Assembly: GCF_037042905.1 (NCBI RefSeq) | Contig: NC_087252.1 | Coordinates: 17,546,001-17,610,000 of the forward strand | Direction: 5' to 3' | Source: Lytechinus pictus | Taxonomy: Eukaryota | Length of the DNA stretch: 64,000 nucleotides | Shown here: one piece after another, positions 5,260 to 47,612 of the stretch | How positions within the stretch are numbered: position 1 is the stretch's first letter | Layout of the letters: each line of letters starts with the position of its first letter | Notes under the pieces: generated by a model | Told to the model about the DNA's origin: nothing | Database searches by the model: none | Seen by the model: only the letters and a program-made list of their open reading frames with translations | Translations under genes and position numbers: made by a program

Positions 5260-5272
5260 TCCTCCCCCCGCC
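5260..5272 (-). other. Polypurine tract
   Basis: Minus strand GGCGGGGGGAGGA directly abuts the TG start of the 3' LTR. Confidence 0.85.
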
Positions 5273-5525
5273 AACAGTAGCGGAAAAGAGCTAAAATTCT
5301 CCTGACTGAATGAATTCTGTAATTATTATTTTATTTTATTTTTGTTTACAGACCAGATGAAAAATATTCAAGTTTTGCACCGACATAAAATTCAGGAGTA
5401 TCAAAAGCAACTTTCTTTCAAAAAATTCAAATTTTGCACCGACAAAAATTCAGGAGTATCACAAGCAACTTTCTTTCCTCAATGGCATTGAAAAACCAAA
5501 ACACAATTTATGAACTCCATATTGT

Positions 5526-10723: not shown

Positions 10724-10830
10724 ATTTCTTAAAGACTTCTGATCCCTGATGTAAAGAGTCGTCAGATCCAGACAGCAGACTACTTGTGGTGACCATCAGC
10801 CCTCTTCCCAGATGAAAGAAATTGAATTGT

Positions 10831-15398: not shown

Positions 15399-17300
15399 AT
15401 GGCGACACTTGAGCATACCGTTTCGCGGGGTTTACAGTGTCCAGTTTGTTTGAGTTTGCTAAATGATCCCAAGCAACTATCATGTACACATACGTTTTGT
15501 CAAAAATGTATCCGAGATATTCTAGCGTGCTCTTTACAGAATAGTACTGTAACTTGTCCATTATGTAGAATCAAAACAAATGTCGCGGATGGAAATGTTG
15601 CCAATCTTAAAACTAATGTACCTGTTAAGTCACTTGTTGATGACGTCAGGAAAAGCAAACAACTATGTGACATGTGTGACGAGCAATCAGAAGCCGCACA
15701 CTTCTGTTGCGATTGTGGTAAGAACATGTGTAACGCATGTCTGCAAGCTCATAACACATGGAAACCACATCTTAAACATGAAGTAGTGAGCGTTGAAGAC
15801 ATCAGAGAGGGTAGGGTAGTATTAAAGAAAAAGGTTTACTGTCAAGAAGAAGTACACCAATCAGAAGAGTACGAATGCTCTGATGTATGCACGACATGTA
15901 AGAAGCTCATTTGTATGAGATGTCGCATGCTCTACCACGAGAAAACAGGCCACGATGTGCAAGACTTAAGAGAGTACAATTCGTCTTTCACAGAGAGTTC
16001 TGAATTACTTCAGGGTCAAGGAAAGACAAAAGCTACAACAGTCAAGAATCATATGAAGTGTATTGATAATCAAATTAAACGTGTCAATGATCACATTGAT
16101 GCGGAAAATGCGAAGCTTGACAAGATTTGTGAAGAAGCTATCAAGAAAATAAAAGAGAGGAATGCTACCTTGAAAAAGCAACTAGAAGATCAGAGAGAAG
16201 AATTATGCAAGAGTTTAAATGATATGAAAATTGATGATAAGAGGATGGTTAAGAGCATTGAGAGTGCGAGTGATTTGCTGAGTAATACTTTGAAAGCCCC
16301 ACTAGAAGGAGATGTTGTAGCAATTCGTGATTCATTGTCTGGTGAATTGAAGAATGTATTAGATAGAGATGATCCAAAGGTAAAGGTTGCTATTGATGTA
16401 GGTGATCATGCAGAGGAACTGACGTTTACACCAAGCTGCGATCCTGATGCATTATCATTGGGGGAACTGAGGTTTGTGAAATGTAAGCCGAAATGCAATG
16501 TACTACTCTCAGAGAGAGGACATATGAATGGCATAGCTGCTACAAATAATGGTATGATGGCTGCTGGTTATAGTACAGGAGGGATCGATATCTTCTCTGC
16601 TGATGGTCAGCTAGTAAGGACAGTCTTTAAAGATGTAAGGATAAAAACGATAGAATTCCTCTCTGATGATCGTTATGTTGTGCGCAGTTATAATAATAAT
16701 ATATCACTGTACACATCAGACGAAGAGAGACAGGATGTGACATTCGATACTCTAAGTGATGGTGAAGGTGGGACAGGTGGTCTCACTGTAGACAGCAATG
16801 ATCTGATCTATGTTAGCTACAGGAAAGCTAATAAGATCCAGGTATTCTCACCATCAGGTGGGAAGGCTATCAGGGAGATACCATGCGATGGGTATGAACC
16901 TTCGCAAATCAAAAGTTATGGTGATTCGTTGATCGTTAAGCAGTTTATGAATGCAATAATACGTATTGATGAAAAGGGTGGTGTAATGCATAAATTAACG
17001 AAACCAGTGGAAAATAACCTCTTTGCTGATGTGAGTAAAGACAACACAATCCTAGTCGCCTCTGTAAGACACGAGGACGGCCTGCTCAATATCGATGAGT
17101 ACACCGGTGAACTGAAACACATCAAGACTCTTATATCTGATTACAAGATTGAGAAAACGGAGAGGCAATGGTATTACCTAAAACAGTTTCAATCAGGAGA
17201 GATAGCTTTCTGTACACCGGGTAGGCTCTACATATTCAATCTAGTAACTAGTGAATTATCTCGTGTGAATATTGTGTTTTGCAGCCAAATCTCTAAATAA
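15399..17300 (+). CDS. TRIM/RBCC E3 ubiquitin ligase (RING, 2 B-boxes, coiled coil, NHL-like beta-propeller), copy A, uninterrupted CDS
   Basis: 633-aa ORF: CPVC...LSCTHTFCQKC...CPLC RING; CDMC...CCDC...CNAC...H...H B-box 1; C..H...C..C....C..C...H...H B-box 2; heptad-rich coiled coil; repeats such as GLTVDSNDLIYVS...KIQVFSPSG. Confidence 0.93.
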   Translation: MATLEHTVSRGLQCPVCLSLLNDPKQLSCTHTFCQKCIRDILACSLQNSTVTCPLCRIKTNVADGNVANLKTNVPVKSLVDDVRKSKQLCDMCDEQSEAAHFCCDCGKNMCNACLQAHNTWKPHLKHEVVSVEDIREGRVVLKKKVYCQEEVHQSEEYECSDVCTTCKKLICMRCRMLYHEKTGHDVQDLREYNSSFTESSELLQGQGKTKATTVKNHMKCIDNQIKRVNDHIDAENAKLDKICEEAIKKIKERNATLKKQLEDQREELCKSLNDMKIDDKRMVKSIESASDLLSNTLKAPLEGDVVAIRDSLSGELKNVLDRDDPKVKVAIDVGDHAEELTFTPSCDPDALSLGELRFVKCKPKCNVLLSERGHMNGIAATNNGMMAAGYSTGGIDIFSADGQLVRTVFKDVRIKTIEFLSDDRYVVRSYNNNISLYTSDEERQDVTFDTLSDGEGGTGGLTVDSNDLIYVSYRKANKIQVFSPSGGKAIREIPCDGYEPSQIKSYGDSLIVKQFMNAIIRIDEKGGVMHKLTKPVENNLFADVSKDNTILVASVRHEDGLLNIDEYTGELKHIKTLISDYKIEKTERQWYYLKQFQSGEIAFCTPGRLYIFNLVTSELSRVNIVFCSQISK

Positions 17301-17471
17301 TTAACATATTCTTCAATTTATCTGTGTCAATATCAATCTTGGTAGGAATTTCCCATTAATGTCAAGAATCAAGAAATTGTATTCATTCCAATCGATCTCC
17401 CCTAAACAAAGAAAAAATTACGCATACCATAGTATAGTTCAACTTAAATGTATATGATATACAACCATTAA

Positions 17472-18243
17472 CCCTAACTAGGCCGGGCTTTTTTGGCTAT
17501 TCTGTGGCCTGGGGGGGAGGGGGGGTTGATTCAACCCCCCCCCTGAGATCTCGCCCGCCGATCGTGCGAGCGCCGTAAAAAATTTGCACGCTGGTAGTGT
17601 GCGATGTAATCTACAAGGCTGTATGATAAAATTTTCCAAAATAATGAGATTTTATTTTATATGAATTAATTATGCTAATTTATGCATAAATCATACTTTT
17701 TGCTCTAATTCACTAAATAAAGCTCCTAGAATGCTAATTTTTGGTAAAAATATTCTTTGTAGCATTCTTAACAATGGCAATTGAAAAAAACTTCGGTTTG
17801 GAAATCAATTTCTTATGTATTTTATTGTTTTATGAATTTCTTATGTATTTCTTTGTTTTTCAACCTTTTGTTTTTCTTTGTTTTTTTCACCAGATTTATT
17901 GCACAACCTTTTTGAAGCATAATTATGCTAAAATCAATTGCTTTCAGCTGTTTAAAGTAAAAATAATCATATCTTTATGAATAAGATGAGTAAACTCAAT
18001 TTTCATTGACTTTGTACACAAAATCACGTTTTGGAACAATTTTTGGTCTGACATGCACTTACAAAATATTGCGTAATTTCGGAACCGCGTACCCAGGCGT
18101 CGTAAATTTGGTCTCAAAAGATGCGCGAGACGTAAAACTATAAACTCTGCGAGTGGCGTGGTCAAAAAAATTCGTGCGGCGGAATGATCGCAGAAAATGT
18201 TGAGGGGGTTGAATCAACCCCCCCCCCCCCGGCCATTTTAGGG
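17472..18243. mobile_element. piggyBac-like non-autonomous element
   Basis: TTAA at 17468-17471 and 18244-18247; CCCTAA...GGCCGGG / CCCGGCC...TTAGGG termini; subterminal palindromes GGGGTTGA(T/A)TCAACCCC at both ends. Absent from copy B. Confidence 0.85.
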
Positions 18244-19340
18244 TTAAATACATTCATTGGTTTAAAATACATACGAAATTAATGTAATGAAATTTGATAC
18301 TCTGCTAAAGTTAAAAATATAACTTAAATTGTAGAAGCTCTGTCCCAAGTTATACCCCAACTGTATCATGTTTAGCCCATTTTCCGGCATTTCATATTAG
18401 GGGTTATAATGATTTTACTGTTCCTTTATTTACCATTCCTAAAATAAAGCAGTTTGAGCGCTTTACTGAAATCTCCATTTGTAGTAGAAACTATTTGAAC
18501 AAAGTGACTGTTTAATGTTGCTCTTTCTTTCTTTGTAATTATAATAATTTTAGATATTCTTATTTAGAAAGAAATATGTTCCAACATAAATACATGTATA
18601 TGACACCAAATCAATATTGAAAAGTGAAACACAACTGATTACGTTGATTATTCCAAAAAGATTAAAACATACAATTATTTCATAACCAAATTTACTTGCT
18701 TGCTGAAGTAATGAATATTCTATGAGATAAACGACTGATGTTGACAACGCGACCAGTAATGAGTCTGGTACCAGTACCCTTTAGTAAAGATGAAAGACTT
18801 TTAAAATGTATTATTTTTTTGTTGAGAATGGGGATTAATAAATACTAGTCTCAATTGATATTATGTAGGCGCATGCAAGATTGCAAGTAAGTGCATGCAA
18901 GATCTTGGGGATGGGCCGGGAATATTCAGGGAATAGAAATAAAGAAAAAAAAATTAAAAAAGCAATGATTAATCGCAATAACACTTCAATACAATTAAAA
19001 ATAATCAATCGACCAATATCAGATCAATACGGCAAAAAATTCTGATGTTGAAAAATCCAGGCGAAAGTTGCCCCTACACTTGGCTTTTCATAGACCCAAT
19101 ATTGAGAGAAGTGAGTTGATAGACATGATACACGTGACGTGATAACGGTGGATTACAAACTAGAGAGTAGCATTTTCTTTTCATTCAGTCTTTATCATTT
19201 AAATATGATTTGGGTCGTATGGTAATACTGGTGAGATTATTATAAATAATATACGAAATGCATGCATATGATACAGATTTACATTAGCCGAATAGAAAGA
19301 TGGTGTGTATTATTTGTAGATTACTTCTCTTGGTGTTATA

Positions 19341-19552
19341 TGATAAAATAATAAATGATAAATCCATAATTTATTGTTCGAAATAGACATGAAATGAAAT
19401 GCTCCGAAAATGTGCTTTTGCCCAATTGATCGTGGGCCCGGCAGCCGCTGTGCAGCGCCAGATCGACGAGGCTCTATCCCTTTAATCGTTGAACGCCAAA
19501 CAGGGTAGCAGCAACTCCCATCTTTTAACGTCTTTTGGTCTGACGCGGCCAT
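19341..19552 (-). mobile_element. 5'-truncated SINE (body and AT-rich tail)
   Basis: Minus strand GGCCGCGTCAGACCAAAAGACGTTAAAAGATGGGAGTTGCTGCTACCCTG... resembles conserved metazoan SINE central domains. Absent at the equivalent site in copy B (~60430). Confidence 0.7.
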
Positions 19553-21108
19553 ATTTAAATATACTCTACTTGGATGCTATGGTATGTTCACGATTTCGAT
19601 AAATTTATCAGTTTGTTAATAATAATTTCCATTACATATTCCTTTTTTGTTTTCGATATTATCACTAACATAACCATAAATCAATGAGCGATGACAACAA
19701 AAATACATGTCGAATTCGATGTCAATACAAATGGAAATCATAAGAACCACCATTCCATTCATGGCATCGCAAGTTGGGAATAACCTTCATCAAAATGTAA
19801 ACAGAAATGTACAGTCATTATGTTCACAGCTAACGAATGAAAGGAGGTATATAGGCCTATAAATGTATATACATATTTCGTTTATTTTTTTATAACGTTT
19901 ATTGCGCTTATTAATTGTATTAGGTTGTAACTTCGTTTTATTTCAGATGGCTCAATCGAAGGGGAAAATGTTCATCGTAATACAATTATACTGAGTTTTT
20001 TTCTTAAAGTGCATTGTTTTATATTTGATCACATGTAAAGGACTAAGTGTGTTCATATTGTAAAACAGCTGAAAAAAGTTATACATACCACTAAACCCTT
20101 TCTATTTCCGCAGTCATTTCACCAAACAAATAAAAAATAAAAAAATAATTTTATTTGCATTGTATATTATTTGTTCTCATTCATTCATTCAATCATAAAA
20201 CTAGTTATTTGAATTCATTAAGACCAATCAAACGTTTCAAACAGACTTGTAGATGGAAAATTCAAACAGTGCCCTTCCATCTATATGTTCAAACACATGC
20301 TAAAGTCCAATTTTTATACATTATACATTTATATATATATTACAAGTGGTGTCCATTACGTGCACTTTTGCATAAAATTTTAACCAACTGTTGTATTTGT
20401 TTTTTGTCATTTAATATAGCATTTATAAAAAGTAATTAATATTATTAACAGGGAGACCGACGAAAGAAAAATAAATGGATTCAAGGGGATGCATGGTCAT
20501 AACAAATTTATAGATAATAAAACATGTATCAGGAAAGTAATGGGGCTTCCAGAGCTATGAATAAGAGAAACGAAAAAAGAAAAAGGAAGAAAGAATGACA
20601 AAAGTGGGATTAAATTAAAGGAAAAAAAAAGATACAAGATTGTTGCCAAAAGTGCTCAGTATGGCCTAATAGAGATCTTTCTTGGCTGGACAAATACAAT
20701 TTGTGAAAAGAATTTCAGGAATATTTCATAAGTCAGTCCTCAATAGTCAACTTATCACGCTTTCACAATACTTCGTTTCAAGTTTAGGTACTATTATTCT
20801 TTCTTGCCCTGCAATCATTTAACTCTCATCCAAACATATTGACATGTTATATTTAACAGTAATTATAATTTTTTTTTAATTTTTTTTTTAAAGTGATATT
20901 GGAGGTCATTGTCACCTCATTTTATCCTGAAATAGTTTCACAATAAGTCTTTATCGATTATCTTATTCTTTTCATGCCTATTCATGATTGTGATTGCGCC
21001 AGTATCAAGTAATTATGACATATCAATTTTCTTACTTACTTAATATTTACAGCCTGGGCCTTTAGTACGGCTATTTTTATGTATTATTATGCTTTTTAAC
21101 CTACGCGT

Positions 21109-21238
21109 TTCCATGACTACCATAATCAATCGTAAATGCATCTATTATTTCAATATCTTGTCTCTGTGAGTTTCGTATCCCTGATGAAGACGCGAGGTTT
21201 GCGTCGAAAATGTGGGTAATACTTCGAAAAAAAAACTT
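21109..21238 (+). mobile_element. Penelope-like retroelement fragment with a hammerhead-ribozyme-like core
   Basis: CTGATGA-A-GACGCGA-GGT-TTGCGTC-GAAA at 21181-21209, within a ~130-bp segment missing from copy B (~62105). Confidence 0.55.
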
Positions 21239-22480
21239 TGTGTTGAAACTTAATGCATACCACGCAAAGATGTATTTTTTGTCTCTGTTTTCTCTCCATC
21301 TGAATCAAACACGCGTAATATACTATTGTCATATATATATATATGTATAGATTTCTTTTTGAATATTACCAATAAAGAAAATGAATTATTTTATCAGTGT
21401 ATAAAATATTATTACATAATTTTGCCGTTAAAGTGAAATGAGTCAAAATTGAAAGGAATGGAATGACCAAGTTTATGAGCTGTAAATAGAAAAGCATTAT
21501 GTTTGAATTTGAGGTAACTCGAGGCGGCAAACGTGGTAATGGAGGAATTCACTATTTACTCTAAATATATTGCTAACGACGATGGGTAAGTATTGATTGT
21601 TAAAGTGATATATAAAGGATTCAACTTACAAATGTGTGCATTTTAAAAATGTTGTAAAAAAATTGATCCGTGTCGTTTTTTACATGAATCATAATACAAA
21701 TAGCCTTTGTTTTAAGAATAGCAGCTATCTGATATGCCGCGCTATTTTCAAACGCTAGAACAAGGTTAATTCAAACAGGCTATAAATAATATAGAGTATA
21801 AATAATTATTTCAGTATATCTATATATCATTAATGACGCCTTGTAATATATACACTTGCAAAAAATTATAATCTAGCTACCTGGTGTAAGTCCATGTAAT
21901 CTATCAAAATTCTACGATGTATAGGTCATATATATATATATATATATATTTTTTTGGAAATAATGTACCAGTCTCATCTCTTTTAAAGACTGAACCCTAC
22001 TCAGAATTTGGTAACTGACAAAGAAAGGTGATTCGTGAAAAAAAATTACTTTCATCTTCGTGCATATTAAATGAAGATAAATTCGATGATCTATGCAAGT
22101 CGCTGATATACAGAATACAAAACAGTGGGGAAAGAATGGCACCCTGAGGGATTCCACAGTTTGTATTTCCCAGTTCTTACACGTGATATTTATAACTGCG
22201 TACATAGGTTTATAATCCACTTTTTTAGATAATAAATCGTTTCTTCCTTCTGAGAAACCTCGCATTCGCATTCATTTACAAAGTGTAGCTGCAACGAAAG
22301 ACGAGGATTGATTTTCTATTTTGTCGTGGTGATGTTAGGTGAACATGCTGAACGTGCGTGATGTTCAGAGTTATGCATGTATGTCATGTATGTGGATGGT
22401 GGACATGAAAATGGTTGTGATAATTGGAGACGGTGTTTATCATGGCGACCATGCTGAAGAACTTGATGGTAAGAGTTGAA

Positions 22481-22733
22481 CACTGCTAAAACGCTGGTGT
22501 TAATGTGACACCTTCCTGGTATCTATTTCGGTCCACACCAGAGAGGTGTTGAAATAACACCGTTTCGGCGTTAGGCTAACACCGTTTCGGCGTTAGGTTA
22601 ACAACAATTAAGCATTTAAGCAACACCAATTAGTGTTTGATTCTAAACTGGTGACGTTGTTTCAACGCTTCTCTACTGTGGTCCGATATAGATACCGGGC
22701 TGGTATTTAATCAACATAGCTGTTTTTGCAGTG
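22481..22733. mobile_element. Palindromic MITE with CACTGC...GCAGTG termini; equivalent copy at 63379-63610
   Basis: Termini CACTGCTAAAA / TTTTTGCAGTG; internal inverted blocks GGTATCTATTTCGGTCCACA / TGTGGTCCGATATAGATACC. Confidence 0.75.
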
Positions 22734-28429: not shown

Positions 28430-28741
28430 ATAGGGGCAAAAGTGCGCTAAATTGGTTTAAAAGTTATCATTCAAATAGAAGACAGCACACATCCCTTAAC
28501 TTTTCTAAATGTGGTATACTATTTTTTATGGGAAGTACCACAGGGTTCTATTTTTGGTCCATTTTTATTTCTGATTTATATCAACGGCATGTACATGGTG
28601 CTAAACACATTAAATTACATATTTTTTGCGGATGACACAAGTATTTGTCTATCCCATCGTGATATTGATATCCTAGGAAGGACTCCTACACTTTCAAAAC
28701 TATCTAGTGGGTTTCGAGGTAATATGCTATCACCGAATGGA
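28430..28741 (+). pseudogene. Degenerate CR1/L2-group LINE RT fragment, left of the Polinton-like insertion
   Basis: EVPQGSIFGPFLFLIYING...FFADDT. Decayed LINE-like sequence resumes after the element at 34069-34740. Confidence 0.85.
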
Positions 28742-30884
28742 AGAAGATATAGTAGTCTGTTTGGACAACTTCCGGTAGAGGGGATTAACATAGTTAATTA
28801 TTAATGAATTATTAATAATTAGTTAATTATTAATTGATTATTAGTTAATTATTAATTAATTATCAATTAGGTGTTTGTTGATATCGGTGAGGTCAAAAGC
28901 GAAGAGTCGTTATGGGGATGAACATAATTAATTTTAAAATTTATGTTAGACAAAGCGGTCAAGTTGGACATGGATATTTTTTGGTAATGTGTGGAGAGTA
29001 TGGATTGATGATGGGACAATAGAATTAGGGGTGTGTGTTGGTCAAGTTCACTCTTGGTGGTTTTGGATGCAGGTAGATGTTTGCCAAGCAGCTCATCTGT
29101 GCGTGTGGAGGGTATGGATTGATGATGGGACAATAGAATTAGGGATGTGTTGGTCAAGTTCACTCTTGGTGGTTTTGGATGCAGGTAGATGTTTGCCAAG
29201 CAGCTCATCTTTGGATAAAGCTAAAGCCAAGTAGTCTTCAAGACATCTGTAGGAAGCAATATTGTAGTTGCATAATTATGAAATAACGGTGACCTCGTGA
29301 AACACTTGGTTAAGGTGACCATAGGGATACATCATTGATTAGTGGCCCTCGATATGGTCATGAAGTTAGAGTGGTATAGGATTATTAGTTACACAGTGAA
29401 TATAATTTCAGGGAGGGGGGTCGCTTACAATTTAACATTACTTTTTCCATGGTTTCAGGTAGGAAATAGCTGTCATTCAATCGGTACGTCTCATTCCGCC
29501 AGTTTGCCACCATCTTGGCGTTGTAGCGTCTACGGCGAAACATCAGCATCGTCATGATCATGGGGTTGTGCCTTGTGGGGGTAATAAGAGAATTTAGCTG
29601 GAATCCACTTCATTCCCTCATATTATTCCAGCAGTGCGGCGTTGCGGCGTCTAACGGCGCCATGGGTTGCGGTATAGAAGGATCACAATTTACCATTTGG
29701 CAATGAGTTCGATCGATGAACTTTGGTGATTGAAGATATGATGTTAAATGTCGGTCCCAATTATAAACCATCATTTCTCATAGATACATGTCTGTAAAAA
29801 CTGAAGTACAAACACTCACACACTCTAACAGAAACACACACTCTCTATTTATCCGATAGTGGGGGTTAACACTTCTTTCAATTATTTGTACCATGACCCT
29901 GCATGCCCCTCCGTTTATTTAAAAAATCTTCAACCTCGAAAAAAACCAATATTCAGATCGAGTGTCAATTCAAAGAGCATGAATGTATCAATGTTGACGA
30001 TAAAGGGCACTTTATCATTTGGAATAATTTTTAATTCAATTTTGTATTTCCCGAGATCGAAGTTCAGGATATCTCATTTTTTATGGGAAATATATTTGCA
30101 GAGGGCACTAAATCGGATCAAATCGTCAAATTTTATGTTTGCAAGGATTTGAATTAATAAAACAAAAAAATAACTTTCACTCTTTTGAGATTGTTATGTT
30201 TTAGGAATGTTATTATTATTATTGTTATTACTATTGTTATTATTATTATTATTACTATTGCTATTATTATTATTATTACTATTGTTATTATCATTACTAT
30301 TGTTATTATAATTACTATTATAAACACAAAACCTCAGTGCGACGCGATTTTTCAAGTGTCAATGTTTGCTGTGCCCCTGCATGCATTCATGCCCCTTTTC
30401 CGTTTATTTTCAAAATCCTTGAGGAAACATTTCATGTAGTTCCAATAACAGCAAGATTATCACAATGTTGACAGAGGGTATGAATGAACTATGACACTTC
30501 ATGAAGAAGATGTTCAGAAAATCTATCTCATTGAAAGAATTGTATTGCCAACAGATGGTTCGTGATGAACTATTACATTTATTATTTGGATAATGTGGCC
30601 AATAGATGGCGTTGCTATATCATTTTAGAATAAATTTATTTGGAAACTGTACTTTCAGAGAAGTTTAGAATATCTCCTTTACAGTAAAGTAACATTGCAG
30701 ATAGAATTAAGGCGCTCAATCGCATCGTCAAATCTGTAAATTTAATATAGGCCTACGATGTGACATGATTGAAAGCACTTCATTGCGGCGTACATTGCTC
30801 TGTTTTGACGGCGTTACGGCAATGTTACGGCGGCGTAAGTTGGCGCTAGTGGCGCTAAGGCGCATCTAACGGCAAAGTCATGAA
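28742..30884 (+). repeat. Left inverted arm (2143 bp)
   Basis: Reverse complement of 31938-34068 with scattered substitutions; the ORF track shows mirror-image ORFs in both arms. Confidence 0.97.
28990..29209. repeat. Two tandem ~113-bp units inside the arm, mirrored at ~33601-33820
   Basis: TGTGGAG(A/G)GTATGGATTGATGATGGGACAATAGAATTAGGG...GCCAAGCAGCTCATCT occurs twice. Confidence 0.9.
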
Positions 30885-30996
30885 CACTGCGCCTCATGGC
30901 GTCATAGTTTGACAATACTCAGCATGGTCAAAGCAATATAAAGTGGTGATGCAAGTGTTGCACTGTCATTTGCAAGCTTAACATCTTCAGATCAAC

Positions 30997-31617
30997 ATGA
31001 ATACTCTCTCAAACCGATTTGCTTGTTCCTTATGCGATAAGACGTATAGTCGCAGGTTTGACGTGAAGAGGCACGAACAAACTGCGCATCGAGAAATGGA
31101 AACGGATGAGGAACCGAATGAAACTGAATCTGAGAATGAAGACTCCAGTGATAATGAAAATATCATAGAGGAAGATTCTAAAATGATAAAATCAGAAAGC
31201 AAAGAAGAAGACAATGGAGATCCTGAAGACAACCTGGTTTATCAAGAATGGTTCAAACTAGCTCTAGCAGCAACCGATGAGATGAGAAATGAAAAGTACG
31301 AAAAATATATCTCAAGGGGTATGAGTGAGGTAGAAGCTCAAGAGAATGCTCACACAACAGTTTTATGGGCAGTCAAACGAATCTTCTTCGACCACTACTC
31401 TTACTTCTTGCGACATAGCTTGTATCTTGAAGAAGATGACACCAATCTTGACATTCTATCTGATATCAAAGAAAGAGTAGAGAATGGAATGGATATTCGG
31501 AAAGCAATTCAACGCGTGTTGGCCAGACACAGAACAAAGTTTGATGTCCTATTTCAATACCAGGAAGAAGAGAAGGATGAAGAAGAGATGGAAGGGACTG
31601 AAGAAACCGACAACTAG
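30997..31617 (+). CDS. 206-aa protein: N-terminal C2H2 zinc finger, acidic linker, predicted helical domain, acidic tail (probable Polinton accessory gene)
   Basis: FACSLCDKTYSRRFDVKRHEQTAH fits F-x-C-x2-C-x3-Y-x8-H-x4-H. Intact ORF with AACATG start, TATA-like TATAAA at 30937-30942, and ATTAAA/AATAAA signals at ~31734, ~31811 and ~31925. Confidence 0.8.
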   Translation: MNTLSNRFACSLCDKTYSRRFDVKRHEQTAHREMETDEEPNETESENEDSSDNENIIEEDSKMIKSESKEEDNGDPEDNLVYQEWFKLALAATDEMRNEKYEKYISRGMSEVEAQENAHTTVLWAVKRIFFDHYSYFLRHSLYLEEDDTNLDILSDIKERVENGMDIRKAIQRVLARHRTKFDVLFQYQEEEKDEEEMEGTEETDN

Positions 31618-31937
31618 TTCACATAATTATACAGAACAAACTTTGTAGATTGTAGAAAGCTGTACTTGTATTATGATCATGATGAAATGATATATTTTCC
31701 ATGCTGATAACTTCCAAGAAAGTGACCAAATATATTAAAATGAATGTACTTTCTGATACTATACAGATTTGAAATCTGCATTGCTTGTTAATATCTTGTT
31801 TCATACTTGAATTAAAATTACAAAATTTGCTGATGTGAAATATTTTTTTGCATGTGTTTGTTTTTCTTCTCTTGTGCTTTGTTGTTAGACGAATTGATAC
31901 GATTAAACGCCTTCTATCAACAAAAATAAAAATTGAA

Positions 31938-34068
31938 TTCATGACTTTGCCGTTAGATGCGCCGTAACGCCACCTTACGCCGCCGTAACATTGCCGTAAC
32001 GCCATCAAAACAGAGCAATGTACGCCGCAATGAAGTGCTTTCAATCATGTCACATCGTAGGCCTATATTAAATTTACAGATTTGACGATGCGATTGAGCG
32101 CCTTAATTCTATCTGCAATGTTACTTTACTGTAAAGGAGATATTCTAAACTTCTCTGAAAGTACAGTTTCCAAATAAATTTATTCTAAAATGATATAGCA
32201 ACGCCATCTATTGGCCACATTATCCAAATAATAAATGTAATAGTTCATCACGAACCATCTGTTGGCAATACAATTCTTTCAATGAGATAGATTTTCTGAA
32301 CATCTTCTTCATGAAGTGTCATAGTTCATTCATACCCTCTGTCAACATTGTGATAATCTTGCTGTTATTGGAACTACATGAAATGTTTCCTCAAGGATTT
32401 TGAAAATAAACGGAAAAGGGGCATAAATGCATGCAGGGGCACAGCAAACATTGACACTTGAAAAATCGCGTCGCACTGAGGTTTTGTGTTTATAATAGTA
32501 ATTATAATAACAATAGTAATGATAATAACAATAGTAATAATAATAATAATAATAGTAATAATAATAATAAGAACAATAGTAATAATAATAATAATAATAA
32601 CATTCCTAAAACATAACAATCTCAAAAGAGTGAAAGTTATTTTTTTGTTTTATTAAATCAAATCCTTGCAAACATAAAATTTGACGATTTGATCCGATTT
32701 AGTGCCCTCTGCAAATATATTTCCCATAAAAAATGAGATATCCTGAACTTCGGTCTCGGGAAATACAAAATTGAATAAAAAATTATTCCAAATGATAAAG
32801 TGCCCTTTATCGTCAACATTGATACATTCATGCTCTTTGAATTGACACTCAATCTGAATATTGGTTTTTTTCGAGGTTGAAGATTTTTTAAATAAACGGA
32901 GGGGCATGCAGGGTCATGGTACAAATAATTGAAAGAAGTGTTAACCCCCACTATCGGATAAATAGAGAGTGTGTGTTTCTGTTAGAGTGTGTGAGTGTTT
33001 GTACTTCAGTTTTTACAGACATGTATCTATGAGAAATGATGGTTTATAATTGGGACCGACATTTAACATCATATCTTCAATCACCAAAGTTCATCGATCG
33101 AACTCATTGCCAAATGGTAAATTGTGATCCTTCTATACCGCAACCCATGACGCCGTTAGACGCCGCAACGCCGCACTGATGGAATAATATGAGGGAATGA
33201 AGTGGATTCCAGCTAAATTCTCTTATTACCCCCACAAGGAACAACCCCATGATCATGACGATGCTGATGTTTCGCCGTAGACGCTACAACGCCAAGATGG
33301 TGGCAAACTGGCGGAATGAGACGTACCGATTGGGTGACAGCTATTTCCTGCCTGAAACCATGGAAAAAGTAATGTTAAATTGTAAGCGACCCCCCTCCCT
33401 GAAATTATATTCACTGTGTAACCAATAATCCTATACCACTCTAACTTCATGACCATATCGAGGGCCACTAATCAATGATGTATCCCTATGGTCACCTTAA
33501 CCAAGTGTTTCACGAGGTCACCGTTATTTCATAATTATGCAACTACAATATGGCTTCCTGCAGATGTCTTGAAGACTACTTGGCTTTAGCTTTATCCAAA
33601 GATGAGCTGCTTGGCAAACATCTACCTGCATCCAAAACCACCAAGAGTGAACTTGACCAACACATCCCTAATTCTATTGTCCCATCATCAATCCATACCC
33701 TCCACACGCACAGATGAGCTGCTTGGCAAACATCTACCTGCATCCAAAACCACCAAGAGTGAACTTGACCAACACACACCCCTAATTCTATTGTCCCATC
33801 ATCAATCCATACTCTCCACACATTACCAAAAAATATCCATGTCCAACTTGACCGCTTTGTCTAACATAAATTTTAAAATTAATTATGTTCATCCCCATAA
33901 CGACTCTTCGCTTTTGACCTCACCGATATCAACAAACACCTAATTGATAATTAATTAATAATTAACTAATAATCAATTAATAATTAACTAATTATTAATA
34001 ATTCATTAATAATTAACTATGTTAATCCCCTCTACCCGAAGTTGTCCAAACAGACTACTATATCTTCT
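31938..34068 (-). repeat. Right inverted arm (2131 bp)
   Basis: Reverse complement of 28742-30884. Confidence 0.97.
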
Positions 34069-34740
34069 AATGGAAACATATGATAAACATTTCAAAGGGA
34101 GGAAGGCTAATGGTAACTGTGATTTAAGAATAAAACTTGACAATACTTTTTTTAAACAAAGGTGTCTACTAGGATCATAGGGATGTTCGTTAAAGGTCAA
34201 CTTTGATGGAATTATCACTTGAAACACATCAGTAAATCATTTTCTCGAAATATAAACTACACTATATTGAATACATTGAACCTGACAAAATAATATGCAT
34301 TTTTCACAATAGTCTTATTCTACCTGCTGTGTCATGTTGCAGTTCTCTTTGGACAATATGAAGGAAAGTCACATATGAAGTTCTTCTGTTGTAGACAAAG
34401 CAATTTTCTATTCTATGCTAGTTTGTTTGGTTACCCTTACCACATTGTCAATGTCTGGCTGTTGATGATATCCATTTCCTTCAAACTTCCCTTTTAATCT
34501 ATCGATTCAGTGCCGAAATGTTACCTGCCCGCATTTTCACTATGTTTCCACAAGAATGCTATCCATATCCAACATATAAGTGAAGCATTTAATATGGACT
34601 TTTACAACCCTCGCACGTTGTTGGCTCACAAAGCTATATGGTCCCGATGTTTGGAATTCCCTATCCACGTGTAGTAGGAATTTATTATTAGTTTATTCCT
34701 TCAAAAGTGCAGTTAAACGAATACTCATCTTGCAGGTTTA
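34069..34740 (+). pseudogene. Continuation of the degenerate LINE interrupted by the Polinton-like element
   Basis: Decayed CR1/L2 C-terminal-like motifs (e.g. YGPDVWNSL near 34640-34665) on the same strand as the RT fragment before the TSD. Confidence 0.55.
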
Positions 34741-39175: not shown

Positions 39176-40769
39176 ATGGCACCTAGTGTTACCACAAACA
39201 AATGCAAAGGCAACCCAGGTACAAACTCATTCTCATTCAAACTTCCTAAAGGAATAACAATTTCGAGCATTGGTTTTGCTATAAAGCTTATTTATGACTC
39301 AGGATTGCCCGGCAGTGATTCAGACATAGACAATGAAATTGTTGAAAATAACCTGGTGAAAGTTTACCCTAACTTGAATCGTACAATCTGCCGCCATTTT
39401 AGTTTGGTTCATAGTGAGCATGAAGAGGTAACACATGAAATCAACTATGCCACGAAATGGGACGTAAATTCTATGAAAAGCATTGACTTTGGAAGTTGCT
39501 TGATATGTAAAAAGGAGGTGACAATCAGTAACAATGTAGTTTGTGAAAATTGCATGAATCTGCCAAATAAAATGCAATCACTGGAATCCGCAATCATTGA
39601 CATTACATCTAGATTGGACGACCAGCATTATCATGAATCAATAGATGTGAACTCGAAGTCAATCGATACTCCCGCCAAAGACGAGAATACAAACAAAAGG
39701 GATAAAGAACGTAACGATCGTGAATATGATGAAGACCTAGTCTTCAAAGTACCCCAAACTGTCAACGTTCCCCTACAAGATCAACTCGATGAGTATAAAA
39801 TCAAACAAAAGAAACTTCACGCTCTGACGAAAAACAGTCGAATCGAAGCAGATGACAATGCTTCTCCTAATACTAACATTGACACTGGAATAGACACCGT
39901 GATGAAGAATTACGAAACGTCTAACATTGAAAGCCCAATGACCATAAATGAACACCATGATAAGTCTACCCTAACAAAGACTCCAATGAAAGCAGACGTG
40001 CTAATCATCGGAGATTCAATGACAAAACAGATCAGACCATCTAAACTCTCACGAAGGAAAAAGGTAATCTGTAAAACTCTGAATGGAGCCAAAATAGAAG
40101 ACGCCTGCAGTGATGCATGTAATCTTGCACATCAATGCGAAGTCAGCGAAGTAATCGTACATCTCGGGACGAACAACTTGAAAAGTGACGAGTCTGATGA
40201 AATAATTGCAAAGACATTCTCACTTCTTGATCAAGTCCATCAAGTCCCTGGTGTAAAATCAATCGCTGTATCAACAATCATACATAGGTTAAATGAGACG
40301 AATCGTCAACATGCTAAAGTTGAGGAGGTGAATGACGCAATTAAACGTTCAGCCAATCAGCGTAGTTGGTCGGTAATCGACAACAGTAATATCGACCATG
40401 TCCTCCATCTGAACGCAGATGGCGTACACCTCAATCGGTGGGGAATAATTGCATTCGCGAAAAACATCATTCGATTCCTGCGTAACTTGTCACAAAACTA
40501 TGATGATGCATTCCCACCTTGATGCATTCCCACCTTTAAATCATAGCGAATTACCACACTCAAAAGCTGATCCAGAATTCGCTCCCTATCCCAGAAGTTA
40601 CTTTTCAATCGATCCTGAACGAGGAAATCAGATGAACCAGCCTCCCCCTTTTCCGTGGAATGAGTATTATCCGAGGTCTCGACGCAAAGCAGCAAACAGA
40701 GAATTTCCGAGAGACTGGGTAGATTGTCTGTCCACGGCAAGGAAGCTCTTGAACTCCAGACACCAATAG
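39176..40769 (+). CDS. LINE ORF1 with a Cys-rich motif and SGNH/GDSL esterase domain, frameshifted near the C-terminus by a 16-bp duplication
   Basis: CLIC...CENC; esterase blocks VLIIGDSM, LNGAKI, HLGTNN, DGVHLN. GATGCATTCCCACCTT is duplicated at 40505-40536, and the frame continues in ORF 40449-40769. Confidence 0.85.
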
Positions 40770-40924
40770 ATAACCCAACAAATGAATCCACTTCAATCTT
40801 AGATCAACAACCCACTCAGAAAATTAATTCCGTTGAAAATGATCCGGTGGAACATATGGATAATGAATAATTTCCACCCTACGAACCTGAAGGTGGAATC
40901 TCTCTGAACAAATGTCAGACAGAA

Positions 40925-43785
40925 ATGAGATCATGTCATATAAAGGAAACGAAACATGGCTTTAGAATAGCACAATTAAATATAAGAACTTTATTATCAA
41001 ACATCGACAATCTACAACTTATGGTTGAAGATCTTAAATTAGACCTGATTGCATTGAATGAAACTAGATTAAGCAGTGATATAAATGATGAGCAGTTACG
41101 CATTCAAGACTTTTGTATTTATAGGAAAGATCGGAATAACAAAGGTGGAGGAGGGGCAGTATACGTCAATGAAATTAAGCTTAGCCACAAATTAAGACCC
41201 GATCTTATGAACAAGGATATTGAACTTATAGCTATAGAAGTAAAACAACAAACTTCATCGTCTATAATTGTTTTGGCATGGTATAGACCACCTGGATCAA
41301 GCATTGAATTGTTTAATGTTATTGAGAACGTTCTATCAAAAACTGATGAAGAACAAAAGGATGTCGTATTTTTAGGAGATTTCAATTGTGATATCAATGG
41401 AAACCCATTGTCTTGTTATACAAAACGATTACTTGATATTTGCCAGAATTATTCTCTTACTCAAGTGATAGACGAACCAACAAGGGTAACTCTTCATTCA
41501 TCCACGCTCATTGATTTAATTTATACCTCTAACTGTATGAAAGTTGTCGAAAGTGGCGTCCTTCACATAGGGATGAGCGACCACTCCCTTGCTTATATTG
41601 AATGGGGTAAAATCCGGAAACCATCTTCAAAGCATGTGTATAGAACTTATAGAACTTATAAGAATTTCGATGAAAATCTTTTCTTTTCTGATCTACAAGC
41701 CATCGATTGGCAAAGTGTATATACATGTAGTGATGTTAATCATTCTCTTCTTCAATTCCAAACAATATTTTCTTCATTGTGTAATTTTCATGCCCCTATT
41801 AGGAAAAGCCGTATTAAGAAACACCGAAAACCTTGGATAAATACTGAAATTATTGATCTAATTCGTAAACGAGACAAATTGAAAGATAAAGCGACTCGAA
41901 AGCGTACGCGCGCAAATTGGAAAGCTTATAGAAAGAGTAAAAATTATGTCACTTACAAAATAAAGCAAAACAAACGTAAAACATTCCAAAAGAAAATTAA
42001 AGATTTAAAAGGAAATGTGAAGAACACGTGGAAAAACCTTAACATATTGATACCACGTAAGAATAAAAATACAAAAATTCAATGCTTGATAGATGATGAG
42101 AAAGAAATTCATGAGACTAAAAAAATTTCACAGACATTGAATGATTTTTTCGTAAAGGTAGGCCCTAGACTTGCCAATACAATCGACAGTACAGGGTCTG
42201 CAAATGAAAATAATAATGCAATGCAATTTCACCCGCACTCGTTCATATCTTTCAACTTGTCCCAGTAACTGTAAGCGAAATAAAGAAACAATTATTGAAA
42301 ATGTCTAGTGGCAAAGCGATGGGATGTGATATGATACCAATGAAACTTATAAAGATAGCGATACCATGTATTACTGAACCCTTGGCACATATTATAAATG
42401 TGTCTATTACTACTGCATGTGTACCTACGGAGTGGAAAAAGGCAAGAGTTAGTGCCTTACATAAAGGCGGTGCAAATGAACCTTCTAATTTCAGGCCAAT
42501 TTCGATATTACCTATTTTATCTAAGCTACTAGAACGTATAGTGTTTGATCAATTGTATGAATACTTGAACAGGAACAATTTGATTAATGACTACCAATCT
42601 GGCTTTCGGCCATTACATTCTACAGCAACGGCATTACTCAATACAACAGATGAATGGCTAAAAAGCTTTGATGAAGGCAAATTAGTATGCTCTGTCATGC
42701 TAGACTTAAAAAAAGCATTCGACACGGTTGATTTCGAATTGCTTATCCAAAAATTAAAGCAATATGGAATTGGGGATCACTCAATTGAATGGTTTACAAG
42801 TTACTTATATGGAAGATGCCAGAAAACGACAGTGCATGGTATATCATCTGATTTATTACCCATTAAATCTGGAATCCCTCAAGGGTCCATTTTAGGGCCG
42901 CTTCTTTTCATTTTACATATTAATGATCTACCTTTAGTTCTTAGAAATTGCAAAATAAGTATGTATGCAGATGACACTATTTTATATTATGCAAGTAACA
43001 ACTACTCTGATCTAGAAAACAAAATCAATGAAGATTTGCAAAATGTGAAACGATGGCTTGATCACAATAAGCTTAGTTTGAATATCAAAAAAACTGAATA
43101 TATTGTCCTAGGAACTAGAAATCGACTGAAACTATTCAAAGATGAATCGCTAAATATTCACATTGATGGAACCCCCCTAACAAGAGTTACCCAGTGTAAA
43201 CATTTAGGAGTAATTTTAGATGAAAATCTGTCATGGGGAAAACACATTCAAAATGTGCAGAAGAAATGTAGTAGCGGTTTGTTTATGCTAAAATCGATAC
43301 GAAGTATGGTTGACAAGGATACAATGATTCTAGTCTATAACGCCCTGATTTCATCTCATTTGTCATATTGTGATATAGTATGGGGAAATTGCGGCAAATG
43401 TTTAAAAGATAACCTCCAAAAGATTCAAAATCGGGCAGCTCGCGTTATCAATAATACCGCCTGGGATTCATCCGGAAACGAAAATCTAAATGAACTAAAT
43501 TGGGATACACTTGAAAAGAAAAGGAATGAAAGTGTTGCAATAATGATGTTTAACATACTCAATAACTTAGCCCCTTCATATCTAATCAATAGATTTTCCC
43601 TTAAAGAAAGATCACATAACACAAGAAGTGGGAATCTCAATTTGGAAATAATGCAAATAAAGTCTGAATCTGCAAAGCGCATGTTTATGTACAGAGGCGC
43701 CAGTATGTGGAACTCATTACTCAATATTCAAGCGGCACAAACGAAACACAATTTCAAAACAGGTCTAAAGAGATTATCTGTGTGA
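40925..43785 (+). CDS. LINE ORF2 (APE endonuclease plus reverse transcriptase) with a 1-nt frameshift at ~42260-42266
   Basis: Endonuclease motifs LNIRTL, LNETRL, YRPP, GDFN, TLIDLI, SDH; RT motifs FRPISILP, QSGFR, LDLKKAFDTV, GIPQGSILGP, YADD, HLGVILD. Confidence 0.93.
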
Positions 43786-45885: not shown

Positions 45886-46783
45886 TTGCAGTGGCGGAGG
45901 CTGGATGTGTGAAAAGGGCTAAATTTTCCAATAAAATTTGATTTCATACCTATCACATCACAATCATTTTAGGGCCATGCTCATATAACCAAGGAGATAT
46001 CATCTCCTTGATATAATATAGTACTCAAGAATGGAATGGTGACATGAACTTTTCTGACCGGGATTTACCAATATAATTATAAACTTAAAAGCTTTAAATC
46101 ATCATCAAGAAGGAATGTAAGCGGACAAAATTCAGTTAAAAAAATAAGAATAAACTAAATGGGAGGCTTACAAGTTGCATAAATTGTGTGTGATTTTTAT
46201 TTCATCAAAAAGTATGTTTCTTGGTATTATTCATTGAATGTGTGACTTTCGTAACGTTCAGTATTTTTCATTTGTCATAATCACCAAGGCTACCACTACC
46301 ACATTCACCATCACCGCCACCACCACCATCATCATCATCAGTGTTGATTATCATCACTATCATCAGCAGCATCATTATCGTCAGCAGCAAATCATCTATG
46401 TCATTATCATAGTTATTGAAATTAGGATCATTTTGGTAAGGAAATAATGAAAGGGACTGAAAAAAAAGGTTGTAGCGGGAAGGGAAGGGGATGAATTTGT
46501 TCTAAAGTAAAATCAATGTGAGTAGAATTAACTCTATGTTTTTATCTATATTGCAGTGATGGTAAAAATCAGTACAATACTAGGATGCCATGATGGTCAA
46601 TAATTTAAACTTCAAATTTCAATACTTCACGGGTGAAGATATGGGGCCGTAAGCTTCAGGGTAATTATGTAGAATGATATTAACATTAGATCATTACTCT
46701 AAAATAGATGAAAGATAATTATTTATCATCTATATCAGGTTGTACACAACTGGCCTACAGCAAAAGCAAATGGGGCCATGATA

Positions 46784-47612
46784 CAGTGCGTCCCACAAAA
46801 AACGAAACCGAGATTTATCGATGATTTATCATAACTTAATCACAAATACAATAGACAAATGACCTACCATTGTAAAGCTTAGAATCTCCTCTTTCATTTG
46901 AAATTACTTAGATTATTTCTCATTCACGCATGAGTGGGCAAAAACAATTTGAAGAGGGGATACCAAAAAGTCATTTGGCGGGCTGTTTCTGAGTTTCAAA
47001 AAGAAAACCACATTTCTAAAAAGTTCAATATCTGTTCTTTAATTTGATACATCAATTACAGAAAATGGTCAAGAAATAAGAAAGTTCTGGTTATTTGAAA
47101 TAAGGCTTGAATTTCAATAATTTCATAAAATGAAGAGGTTTTACAGGCTAGCGTTCAAACTCACTCGACACTCCGTTTTGTTGACGCTCAGCCATGCATG
47201 AGGTCTTTTGTTAACCATGCGATAGCTTCTGTGGGAAACCGGTGAAAACACGTTTATTTAATGAAATTATGGAAATACAAGCATTGTTTCGAGAGAACGT
47301 AACTTTTTTACTTCTTGACCATTTTTTGTGATTAAGGTATCAAATTAAAGAGCAGATATTGAACTTTTTAGGCATGTGATTTTCTTTTTAAAATTCAGAT
47401 ACTCCCCCCCCCCCCCGCCAAATGAGTTTTTGGTATCCTCTCTTCAAATTGTTTTTGCTCACTCATGCGTGAATGAGGAATAATCTAAGTAATATCAGAT
47501 GAAAGAAGAGATTCTAAGCTTTACATTGGTAGGTCATTTGTCTATTGTATTTATGATTAAGTAATGATAAATCATCGCTAAATCTCGGTTTCGTTTTTTC
47601 TGGGACGCACTG
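46784..47612. mobile_element. Tc1/mariner-type MITE with long TIRs
   Basis: TA at 46782-46783 and 47613-47614; CAGTGCGTCCCA... / ...TGGGACGCACTG termini; inverted similarity extends more than 300 bp inward. Confidence 0.9.

What the first reader, a model, noticed from the sequence alone, without database searches (positions are those of the whole stretch)
28736..34074. A 5.3-kb 'mini-Polinton': 80% inverted repeat wrapped around one intact zinc-finger gene, cleanly integrated with a 6-bp TSD
Seen: AATGGA duplicated on both sides; AG...CT ends with short terminal repeats (AGAAGA, then AGTAGT 9 nt inside); arms of 2143 and 2131 bp; a 1053-bp core with one intact 206-aa ORF, a TATA-like box and poly(A) signals; insertion into a LINE that resumes after the TSD. 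Known: a 6-bp TSD, AG termini and short terminal repeats for protein-primed slide-back initiation characterise Polintons/Mavericks, which are normally 15-20 kb, encode pPolB, integrase and capsids, and have TIRs usually under ~1 kb. Inference: all core genes are missing and the arms are far longer than usual TIRs. This could be a defective-interfering or satellite genome, with one end copied back onto the other, mobilised in trans by a helper and keeping one regulatory gene. A plain internal deletion would not by itself explain the long arms.
Basis: partly seen in the sequence, partly recalled or inferred. Interest (0 to 1): 0.85.

Follow-up and report, generated by a model that had tools for sequence, protein, structure and literature searches.

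The report
Long-armed mini Maverick-like mobile element
A 5.3-kb piece of mobile DNA in a sea-urchin genome is four-fifths inverted repeat wrapped around one intact zinc-finger gene; it has the insertion scar and end sequences of Maverick/Polinton virus-like transposons but none of their replication or capsid genes, so it probably depends on a full-length helper.

Summary
Arms of 2143 and 2131 bp (about 99% identical) enclose a 1053-bp core with one intact 206-aa ORF. The element starts AGAAGA and ends TCTTCT, and AATGGA lies on both sides. The left flank is a LINE reverse-transcriptase fragment. The right flank is too decayed to prove that the LINE resumes.

The host is a sea urchin, most likely Lytechinus pictus. 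The arms encode nothing recognisable, and no polymerase, integrase or capsid gene is in the element or in the window.

Two results favour a Maverick/Polinton link. The 6-bp duplication and a doubled AG-trinucleotide terminus match the published grammar of Maverick ends. The ORF belongs to a large uncharacterised family (finger, acidic linker, helical domain) under purifying selection. Distant members of that family form the C-terminal module of A32/IVa2-type packaging ATPases, which sit next to rve-chromodomain integrases in bivalve and metagenomic Polinton-like elements.

GCG-rich repeat arrays flank the gene in divergent relatives, and the finger's contact residues predict GCG binding.

Not shown: a helper with matching ends, further copies, or a copy-back origin. 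TIRs of about 2 kb already exist in butterfly polintons.

Verdict: a real mobile element, probably a non-autonomous Maverick derivative and a new variant of a known kind.

The parts
28490..28741 (+). Target: decayed LINE reverse-transcriptase fragment that ends at the insertion point
   Evidence: Pfam RVT_1 positions 119-164/205, E 1.7e-6. Match to the in-window LINE RT aa 194-228 with score 96 against a shuffle maximum of 44.
28736..28741 (.). Left copy of the 6-bp target-site duplication AATGGA
   Evidence: Read directly; chance of 6/6 identity 3.8e-4.
28742..30884 (+). Left arm of the inverted repeat (2143 bp), non-coding
   Evidence: Alignment. No Pfam hit for any stop-to-stop frame of 55 aa or more. 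No Rfam family or tRNA. No hit to family or Polinton proteins.
28742..28756 (+). Terminal motif (AGA)2-TAT-(AGT)2, mirrored at 34054-34068
   Evidence: The grammar of Maverick end motifs is given in PMC8097293.
28794..28869 (.). A+T-rich 11-nt tandem array about 50 nt inside the terminus (mirror 33941-34016)
   Evidence: Tandem Repeats Finder, 7.3 copies.
28989..29210 (.). 112-nt unit repeated twice inside the arm (mirror about 33600-33821)
   Evidence: Tandem Repeats Finder, 96% matches; the repeat finder pairs I17 and I18.
30210..30321 (.). TTATTA-type microsatellite inside the arm (mirror 32492-32600)
30784..30884 (+). GCG-rich short-motif array at the inner end of the left arm (mirror 31938-32030), just upstream of the promoter
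   Evidence: Highest GCG/CGC density of the whole 64 kb: 11 per 100 nt against a mean of 1.1. Motifs listed. Conserved in L001.
30885..31937 (+). Unique core (1053 bp), which equals one compact transcription unit
   Evidence: TATAAA at 30937 and AATAAA at 31925, 13 nt before the right arm begins.
30997..31617 (+). Intact intronless ORF of 206 aa: C2H2 finger (aa 8-31), acidic disordered linker, all-helical domain (aa about 75-190)
   Evidence: AlphaFold2 pLDDT above 90 for aa 80-190. dN/dS 0.18 against L001.
31938..34068 (-). Right arm of the inverted repeat (2131 bp)
34069..34074 (.). Right copy of the target-site duplication AATGGA

Best explanation
This is a non-autonomous mobile element of the Maverick/Polinton type in a sea-urchin genome. 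Shown: it entered an old LINE fragment as one 5327-bp unit and left a 6-bp duplication. It carries no polymerase, integrase or capsid gene. It carries one intact, selectively constrained gene for a small protein with a zinc finger, an acidic linker and a helical domain. Inferred: integration was carried out by an rve-type integrase, and any replication by a protein-priming polymerase, both supplied in trans by a full-length Maverick that recognises the AG...CT ends with their doubled trinucleotide. The 2.1-kb arms are either inherited from a parent that already had long TIRs or were extended by one end serving as template for the other. The encoded protein is a sequence-specific DNA binder: its finger contact residues Arg/Asp/Arg predict the triplet GCG. 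It would bind the GCG-rich repeat arrays at the inner ends of both arms, just outside its own promoter and poly(A) site. The most likely role is control of its own transcription. A less likely role is marking the DNA for the helper's machinery, by analogy with its distant relatives, which form the C-terminal module of Polinton packaging ATPases.
For: Structure, TSD and termini. The published Maverick hallmarks are a 6-bp TSD, (AGT)2//(ACT)2 or (AG)3//(CT)3 ends, and end repeats linked to jumping-back in protein-primed replication (PMC8097293). No core genes. The gene is real and constrained: 12 close homologues; 1346 profile hits, 194 of them at E<=1e-10; dN/dS 0.18 overall, 0.08 for the finger and 0.13 for the helical domain, at dS 0.41. 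Link to Polinton-like elements: the stand-alone family aligns with the C-terminal part of A32/IVa2-type ATPases (hhalign probability 99.7%, E 1.4e-26, 171 columns; Pfam Pox_A32 above its cut-off in P0120). Those ATPase genes lie directly upstream of rve(+chromodomain) integrases in L007 (which also holds a PF03175 polymerase fragment), L011 (Pinctada imbricata chromosome) and L014. The family behaves like element cargo: one assembly (ERZ25070167) holds four diverged copies, two of them truncated and lying beside LINEs, and one copy is flanked by mirrored ORF pairs that imply another long inverted repeat. A rearranged paralogue is annotated in L. pictus. Cis arrays: GCG-rich arrays lie upstream of the gene in L001, L003/L006 and L008, and an inverted array lies downstream in L006 (BLAST E 6e-12). 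Finger positions -1, +3 and +6 are R, D, R in all 10 finger-bearing rows of alignment A2. The rule Arg->G, Asp->C is my own knowledge of the C2H2 recognition code.
Against: No autonomous partner, no second copy and no empty site could be examined. The tie between the gene and Polintons is remote (21-26% identity) and crosses phyla: the best 120 ATPase-fused proteins that carry names are all from bivalves and none is from a sea urchin. The close homologues in ERZ25070167 have no Polinton Pfam domain within 10 kb. AG...CT ends and a 6-bp TSD are short signals. The arms, with several internal tandem-repeat domains, look like those of foldback elements, which are known in sea urchins (PMC4079207). 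The fold search found no relative of the helical domain in PDB or BFVD, so the protein's function rests on the finger alone. In L008 the downstream GCG patch does not align significantly with the upstream array.
Confidence: 0.55

Rival explanations
1. It is a foldback-type or other cut-and-paste long-TIR element, like the TU elements of sea urchins, FB, Galileo or Tetris. It would be moved by a DDE transposase unrelated to Mavericks, and it happens to carry, or has captured, a gene of Polinton-related ancestry.
For: Long arms built of several tandem-repeat domains around a middle segment match the foldback architecture. Foldbacks are recorded in the sea urchin, and Tetris has TIRs up to 1735 bp with tandem-repeat domains (PMC4079207). 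No Maverick core gene lies nearby. Close homologues of the gene have no Polinton domain within 10 kb.
Against: Foldback TSDs reported there are 8-10 bp, and most foldbacks are placed in the Mutator superfamily; here the TSD is exactly 6 bp. Ginger2, which targets 6-bp sites, has TGTNR ends and RTATAY targets (PMC2836005); neither is met. The ends follow the Maverick doubled AG-trinucleotide grammar. Foldback middle segments usually lack a conserved gene, whereas this ORF is constrained.
Confidence: 0.25
2. It is of Maverick type but ordinary in origin: a plain internal deletion of a parent that already had about 2.1-kb non-coding TIRs and carried the finger gene next to one TIR. No copy-back or satellite lifestyle is needed.
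For: Polintons with ~2-kb TIRs exist in butterflies. The junction between the inner left arm and the gene's upstream region is conserved in L001, as expected if arm and gene were neighbours in an older element.
Against: The unique core is exactly one transcription unit, with the arms starting about 50 nt before the TATA box and 13 nt after AATAAA. That is tidier than a random deletion. Inverted arrays also bracket a 46%-identical homologue, which suggests that the gene-between-inverted-arrays layout is itself maintained. No parent could be examined.
Confidence: 0.3
3. It is not mobile: a host gene sits inside a local palindromic duplication, and the flanking AATGGA pair is a coincidence.
For: Only one copy is seen. 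The right flank cannot be proven to continue the LINE. The gene is under purifying selection like a host gene.
Against: The identity of the arms starts and stops exactly at the duplicated hexamer, and the chance of such a 6/6 match is 3.8e-4. The left flank is a reverse-transcriptase fragment cut in mid-domain. The family includes truncated copies next to other transposons.
Confidence: 0.05
4. It is an assembly artefact: a chimeric fold-back read turned into a false palindrome.
For: Long near-perfect palindromes can arise from read chimeras. No read data are available here.
Against: The arms differ by 20 substitutions and two indels. A 1053-bp unique core holds a conserved gene. The flank resumes after a duplicated hexamer. 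A fold-back chimera predicts none of these.
Confidence: 0.02

Closest known systems
Maverick/Polinton virus-like transposons (for example intact vertebrate Mavericks, PMC8097293; sea-urchin Polintons are among those analysed in PMC4028283)
   Same: A 6-bp target-site duplication, terminal inverted repeats, AG...CT ends made of a doubled short unit, and an intronless gene. The gene is distantly related to a module of the Polinton packaging ATPase.
   Different: It is 5.3 kb long instead of 13-25 kb. It has no protein-primed polymerase, integrase, capsid, protease or ATPase gene. Its TIRs are 2.1 kb, against 46-1447 bp in vertebrates and 100-1500 bp in reviews. By definition Polintons encode the polymerase and integrase (PMC5499653), so it is not a member in its own right, only a possible dependant.
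Butterfly polintons with ~2-kb TIRs (bioRxiv 10.1101/2025.02.07.637071)
   Same: The arms are about 2 kb long.
   Different: Those TIRs contain capsid and protease genes and enclose a full gene set. Here the arms are non-coding and enclose a single gene.
Foldback elements (TU of Strongylocentrotus purpuratus, FB, Galileo, Tetris)
   Same: Very long arms with internal tandem-repeat domains around a short middle segment, and a sea-urchin precedent.
   Different: Their TSDs are 7-10 bp, against 6 bp here. The ends differ. Their middle segments usually lack a conserved gene. I recall an 8-bp TSD for TU elements from memory and could not check it.
Ginger2/TDD transposons
   Same: A 6-bp target, and an integrase related to that of Polintons.
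   Different: Their ends are TGTNR and their targets RTATAY. Here the ends are AGAAGA and the target is AATGGA.
Defective genomes with long inverted terminal repetitions in protein-primed viruses, and copy-back defective-interfering genomes (my own knowledge, not checked here)
   Same: One terminal segment is present in inverted form at both ends around a short unique part, and the genome depends on a helper.
   Different: Those are extrachromosomal by-products of infection. This one is integrated and carries a conserved gene, and its layout recurs in distant relatives.

Membership tests
Polinton/Maverick (autonomous) | [quoted passage not shown] | tested here: not met
   No PF03175 or any other Pfam hit in the arm frames. 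No tblastn hit of a Polinton polymerase fragment anywhere in the window.
Polinton/Maverick (autonomous) | Encodes an rve-family integrase | tested here: not met
   The only rve domains in the window belong to the BEL/Pao element at 5526-10723.
Polinton/Maverick (autonomous) | Encodes the capsid, protease and packaging-ATPase module; size 13-25 kb | tested here: not met
   The element is 5327 bp and holds one 206-aa ORF.
Polinton/Maverick (ends and integration) | 6-bp target-site duplication | tested here: met
   AATGGA on both sides; criterion from PMC8097293.
Polinton/Maverick (ends and integration) | 5'-AG...CT-3' ends formed by a short unit repeated at the very terminus | tested here: met
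   (AGA)2 at the terminus and (AGT)2 nine nt further in. The published motifs are (AGT)2 and (AG)3. (AGA)2 itself is not among the motifs quoted there.
Non-autonomous derivative of a Maverick | Shares its terminal sequence with an autonomous element of the same genome | not testable with these tools
The terminus is absent from IMG/VR and from the rest of the window.
Non-autonomous derivative of a Maverick | Several copies with the same structure and different 6-bp duplications | not testable with these tools
   No other copy in the window or in the fetched loci. The exact protein is not on record elsewhere.
Non-autonomous derivative of a Maverick | Internal sequence derived from a Maverick | tested here: inconclusive
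   The ORF family is homologous to the C-terminal module of Polinton-type ATPases. The relation is remote and was seen only in bivalve and metagenomic elements.
Foldback elements (Mutator- or P-related) | Long TIRs with internal tandem repeats | tested here: met
Foldback elements (Mutator- or P-related) | TSD of 7-10 bp | tested here: not met
   The duplication cannot be extended beyond 6 bp: the next bases outward differ. Range from PMC4079207.
Ginger2/TDD | TGTNR termini and an RTATAY target | tested here: not met
   Termini AGAAGA and target AATGGA; criteria.
C2H2 zinc-finger proteins | C-x2-C-x12-H-x4-H finger | tested here: met
   Residues 8-31. The single-sequence Pfam score is below the cut-off (20 against 25.2 bits), but the family profile hits solved C2H2 fingers (ADR1 and Aart, E 7e-5), and the finger is conserved in 10 of 13 relatives.

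The most novel reading that the evidence does not exclude
The element represents a family of gene-carrying satellites of Mavericks in marine invertebrates. Its small finger-helical protein would be a free-standing relative of the DNA-recognition tail of the Maverick packaging ATPase. It would bind the GCG arrays at the inner ends of the arms and so direct a helper's replication or packaging machinery to the satellite DNA. That would make it a hyperparasite of an endogenous virus-like element inside an animal genome.
Probability: 0.12. Interest if true: 0.85.

Novelty: new variant of a known kind. Interest (0 to 1): 0.55.

Why it matters
Mavericks/Polintons are treated as large, self-sufficient virus-like transposons. 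The open literature I could search contains almost nothing on small dependants of them. A clean 5.3-kb form that keeps the ends and one conserved gene would show three things. These elements can have parasites or reduced forms of their own. Their integrase can act in trans on much smaller DNA. An uncharacterised protein family that is abundant in marine metagenomes (1346 profile hits) travels with them. The homology between this family and the C-terminal tail of bivalve Polinton packaging ATPases (2088 relatives) also gives a first handle on what that tail does.

Tried and rejected
1. I searched the arms for coding or RNA content. Pfam on all frames of 55 aa or more, Rfam, ARAGORN, and tblastn with 280 family and Polinton proteins found nothing.

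2. I looked for relatives of the element. The terminus is absent from IMG/VR. The stand-alone family is absent from IMG/VR and from JGI metagenomes. The ATPase-type family is absent from IMG/VR. One alignment was too divergent for the metagenome scan.

3. DNA for the four ERZ25070167 contigs and for P0002 was not retrievable. The inverted repeat around P0010 is therefore inferred only from mirrored ORF pairs.

4. Fold search of the AlphaFold2 model against PDB and BFVD gave no match at E<=0.001.

5. Continuity of the LINE on the right flank is not significant by pairwise alignment, tblastn, blastn or Pfam.

6. I first guessed a bivalve host from the repeat content. That was wrong: the neighbouring TRIM-like gene places the window in Lytechinus.

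7. I considered that the ~1-kb size of most metagenome contigs carrying homologues reflects assembly breaks at inverted arms. I rejected this as evidence, because about 1 kb is the median contig size of the collection and the contig ends of L002-L006 do not coincide.

8. A long inverted repeat in L014 (5683-10077) proved unrelated.

9. The original Polinton paper and the TU-element papers are not held.

None of these letters was sent to a tool or used for a result. The numbering used in the report follows from the canonical C2H2 spacing in the window's own ORF.

Full report
OBSERVATION. The structure is exactly as described. The repeat finder reports two colinear inverted blocks. A global alignment fixes the arms at 28742-30884 and 31938-34068 (2143 and 2131 bp), with 20 mismatches and two short indels, and the core at 30885-31937 (1053 bp). 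The element begins AGAAGATATAGTAGT and ends with the reverse complement of that sequence. AATGGA lies immediately outside both ends, and the bases further out differ, so the duplication is exactly 6 bp. The chance of a 6/6 match at fixed positions is 3.8e-4. The terminus occurs nowhere else in the window, and neither does any other part of the element. The core holds one intact 206-aa ORF (30997-31617), with TATAAA 55 nt upstream of the ATG and AATAAA 13 nt before the right arm starts. The unique core is therefore one compact transcription unit.

TARGET. The left flank is a fragment of a LINE reverse transcriptase cut in mid-domain: Pfam RVT_1 positions 119-164 of 205, E 1.7e-6, and a match to the intact LINE at 42295-43782 with score 96 against a shuffle maximum of 44. 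The right flank shows only weak colinear resemblance to the following RT motifs. It is decayed by stops and at least one frameshift, and no test reached significance. I compared the two flanks separately and did not join them.

HOST. The neighbouring intronless TRIM-like gene (15399-17297) is 86-89% identical to Lytechinus pictus proteins, 84% identical to L. variegatus proteins, and at most 68% identical to Strongylocentrotus purpuratus proteins. The window is from a sea urchin, most likely L. pictus. The rest of the window is repeat-rich: a BEL/Pao element, a three-ORF LINE, and a duplicated TRIM region.

WHAT THE ELEMENT CARRIES. The arms hold an A+T-rich 11-nt array near the tip, a 112-nt unit repeated twice, a TTATTA microsatellite and a GCG-rich array at the inner end. 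They show no protein family, RNA family or tRNA, and no similarity to Polinton proteins.

The ORF has a C2H2 finger, an acidic disordered linker and an all-helical domain that AlphaFold2 models with pLDDT above 90. That domain has no structural relative in PDB or BFVD.

The ORF has 12 close homologues (42-84% identity). All come from marine metagenome contigs or from one large ENA assembly. A profile of these finds 1346 proteins, 194 of them at E<=1e-10, and about a hundred 50%-identity clusters share the same ~200-aa layout. One is a rearranged paralogue annotated in L. pictus.

Against the closest relative (L001, a Tara Oceans contig) dN/dS is 0.18: 0.08 for the finger, 0.13 for the helical domain and 0.56 for the linker, at dS 0.41. 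The protein is functional.

LINK TO POLINTON-LIKE ELEMENTS. Longer members of the family (P0098, P0120, P0127, P0134, P0151, P0107) carry the same finger-linker-helical module as the C-terminal part of an A32/IVa2-type packaging ATPase. A profile-profile comparison of the stand-alone family with these proteins gives probability 99.7%, E 1.4e-26, over 171 columns that span the finger and the helical domain.

Three genomic contexts could be read.
- L007 (JGI metagenome): the gene lies between a fragment of a PF03175 polymerase and an rve plus chromodomain integrase.
- L011 (Pinctada imbricata chromosome): the gene follows an IVa2/A32 ATPase ORF and precedes an rve ORF.
- L014 (JGI metagenome): an intact 475-aa ATPase-finger ORF is followed by an intact 364-aa rve-chromodomain integrase.

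This branch is large, with 2088 proteins at E<=1e-5. Its named members are all from bivalves, and none of the best 120 is from a sea urchin. The tie is therefore robust as homology but remote (21-26% identity), and it crosses phyla.

ENDS. Published vertebrate Mavericks have perfect 6-bp duplications and 6-nt end motifs, (AGT)2//(ACT)2 or (AG)3//(CT)3. The authors connect these with jumping-back in protein-primed replication. Their TIRs are 46-1447 bp and their sizes 12.7-24.6 kb (PMC8097293). A review gives TIRs of 100-1500 bp and TSDs of 5-8 bp (PMC10748475). The element here has (AGA)2 at the tip and (AGT)2 nine nt further in. That is the same grammar, but not one of the quoted motifs.

Arms of about 2 kb are not unprecedented: butterfly polintons have ~2-kb TIRs, though with genes in them. 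Among other 6-bp targeters, Ginger2 has TGTNR ends and RTATAY targets, which do not fit. Foldback elements share the modular long arms and are known in sea urchins, but they make 7-10-bp duplications.

A RECURRENT LAYOUT. L001 aligns with the window from inside the inner left arm straight through the promoter and the ORF (84.5% over 820 nt). The junction between arm and gene is therefore older than this copy. In the lineage of P0006/P0007 (46% protein identity) the gene is bracketed by inverted arrays of ~21-nt repeats: L006 8-153 against 1242-1341, E 6e-12. In that lineage the inverted similarity does not extend beyond the arrays.

In L008 there are GCG-rich patches on both sides, but they do not align significantly. 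In the assembly ERZ25070167, one homologue (P0010) is flanked by mirrored ORF pairs, a 151-aa ORF and a kinase-like ORF on each side in opposite orientation. This implies another long inverted repeat with different content. Two of the four copies there are truncated and lie beside LINEs.

In the window, the 100-nt stretch at the inner left arm has the highest GCG/CGC density of all 64 kb (11 against a mean of 1.1). The finger's helix positions -1, +3 and +6 are Arg, Asp and Arg in all ten finger-bearing relatives. By the usual C2H2 recognition rules (my own knowledge) this predicts GCG. That the protein binds these arrays is an inference, not a result.

INTERPRETATION. Shown: this is a discrete element that inserted as one unit with a 6-bp duplication. 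It lacks all mobility genes. It carries a constrained gene of a family that is tied to Polinton packaging ATPases.

Inferred: it is mobilised in trans by a Maverick integrase and polymerase. The arms were either inherited or extended by end-to-end templating. The protein binds the inner-arm arrays.

I put 0.55 on 'non-autonomous Maverick derivative'. The main rival is a foldback-type element of another superfamily (0.25). A non-mobile palindrome (0.05) and an assembly artefact (0.02) are unlikely.

LIMITS. The host genome, and therefore copy number, empty sites and candidate helpers, could not be searched. Several contexts lacked DNA. The original Polinton and TU-element papers are not held. 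My statements about non-autonomous Polinton entries in repeat libraries, the 8-bp duplication of TU elements, and defective adenovirus genomes with long inverted ends rest on memory.

I declare a slip.

Noticed in passing
window 3438-12656: A BEL/Pao retrotransposon has an intact 1462-aa gag-pol ORF (6335-10723, minus strand) and a separate integrase ORF. Its terminal repeats are nearly identical (99.4-99.6%), but the 357-bp and 1469-bp blocks lie in permuted order on the two sides. This suggests a tandem or recombinant LTR arrangement.
   Followed up: partly
window 15386-22610 and 56879-63508: A segmental duplication (76-94% identity, about 41 kb apart) carries intronless RING/B-box TRIM-like genes (633 and 623 aa). 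These belong to a large Lytechinus-specific expansion.
   Followed up: partly
window 39176-43785: A LINE has three open frames: an ORF1 with a GDSL-esterase domain, an endonuclease and a reverse transcriptase. It is apparently young.
   Followed up: no
window 46781-47615: A small inverted-repeat structure (arms about 200 nt at 94%, plus inner arms at 81%) may be a MITE-like or foldback-like element.
   Followed up: no
L011 2333-3233 (Pinctada imbricata): About 900 bp of ~21-nt tandem repeats containing the palindromic core CCTAATTAGG lie 2 kb upstream of the Polinton-like gene cluster. The window element also has a TAATTA-rich array near its tips. I did not test whether this is more than coincidence.
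   Followed up: no
P0098, L011 9074-9823, L014 295-1719: Bivalve and metagenomic Polinton-type packaging ATPases often carry an additional N-terminal C2H2 finger as well as the C-terminal finger-helical tail. Some annotated bivalve proteins run on into a chromodomain, which reflects the adjacent integrase.
   Followed up: partly
L014 5683-10077: An unrelated long inverted repeat (541-nt arms at 95%, plus further blocks) lies 3 kb downstream of a Polinton-type integrase. Its ends are not AG...CT.
   Followed up: partly
L. pictus protein P0017 (XP_063970141.1): A paralogue of the finger gene, annotated as 'dentin matrix acidic phosphoprotein 1-like', contains an internal duplication of the finger-linker part and lacks the end of the helical domain. 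The name reflects only the acidic linker.
   Followed up: partly
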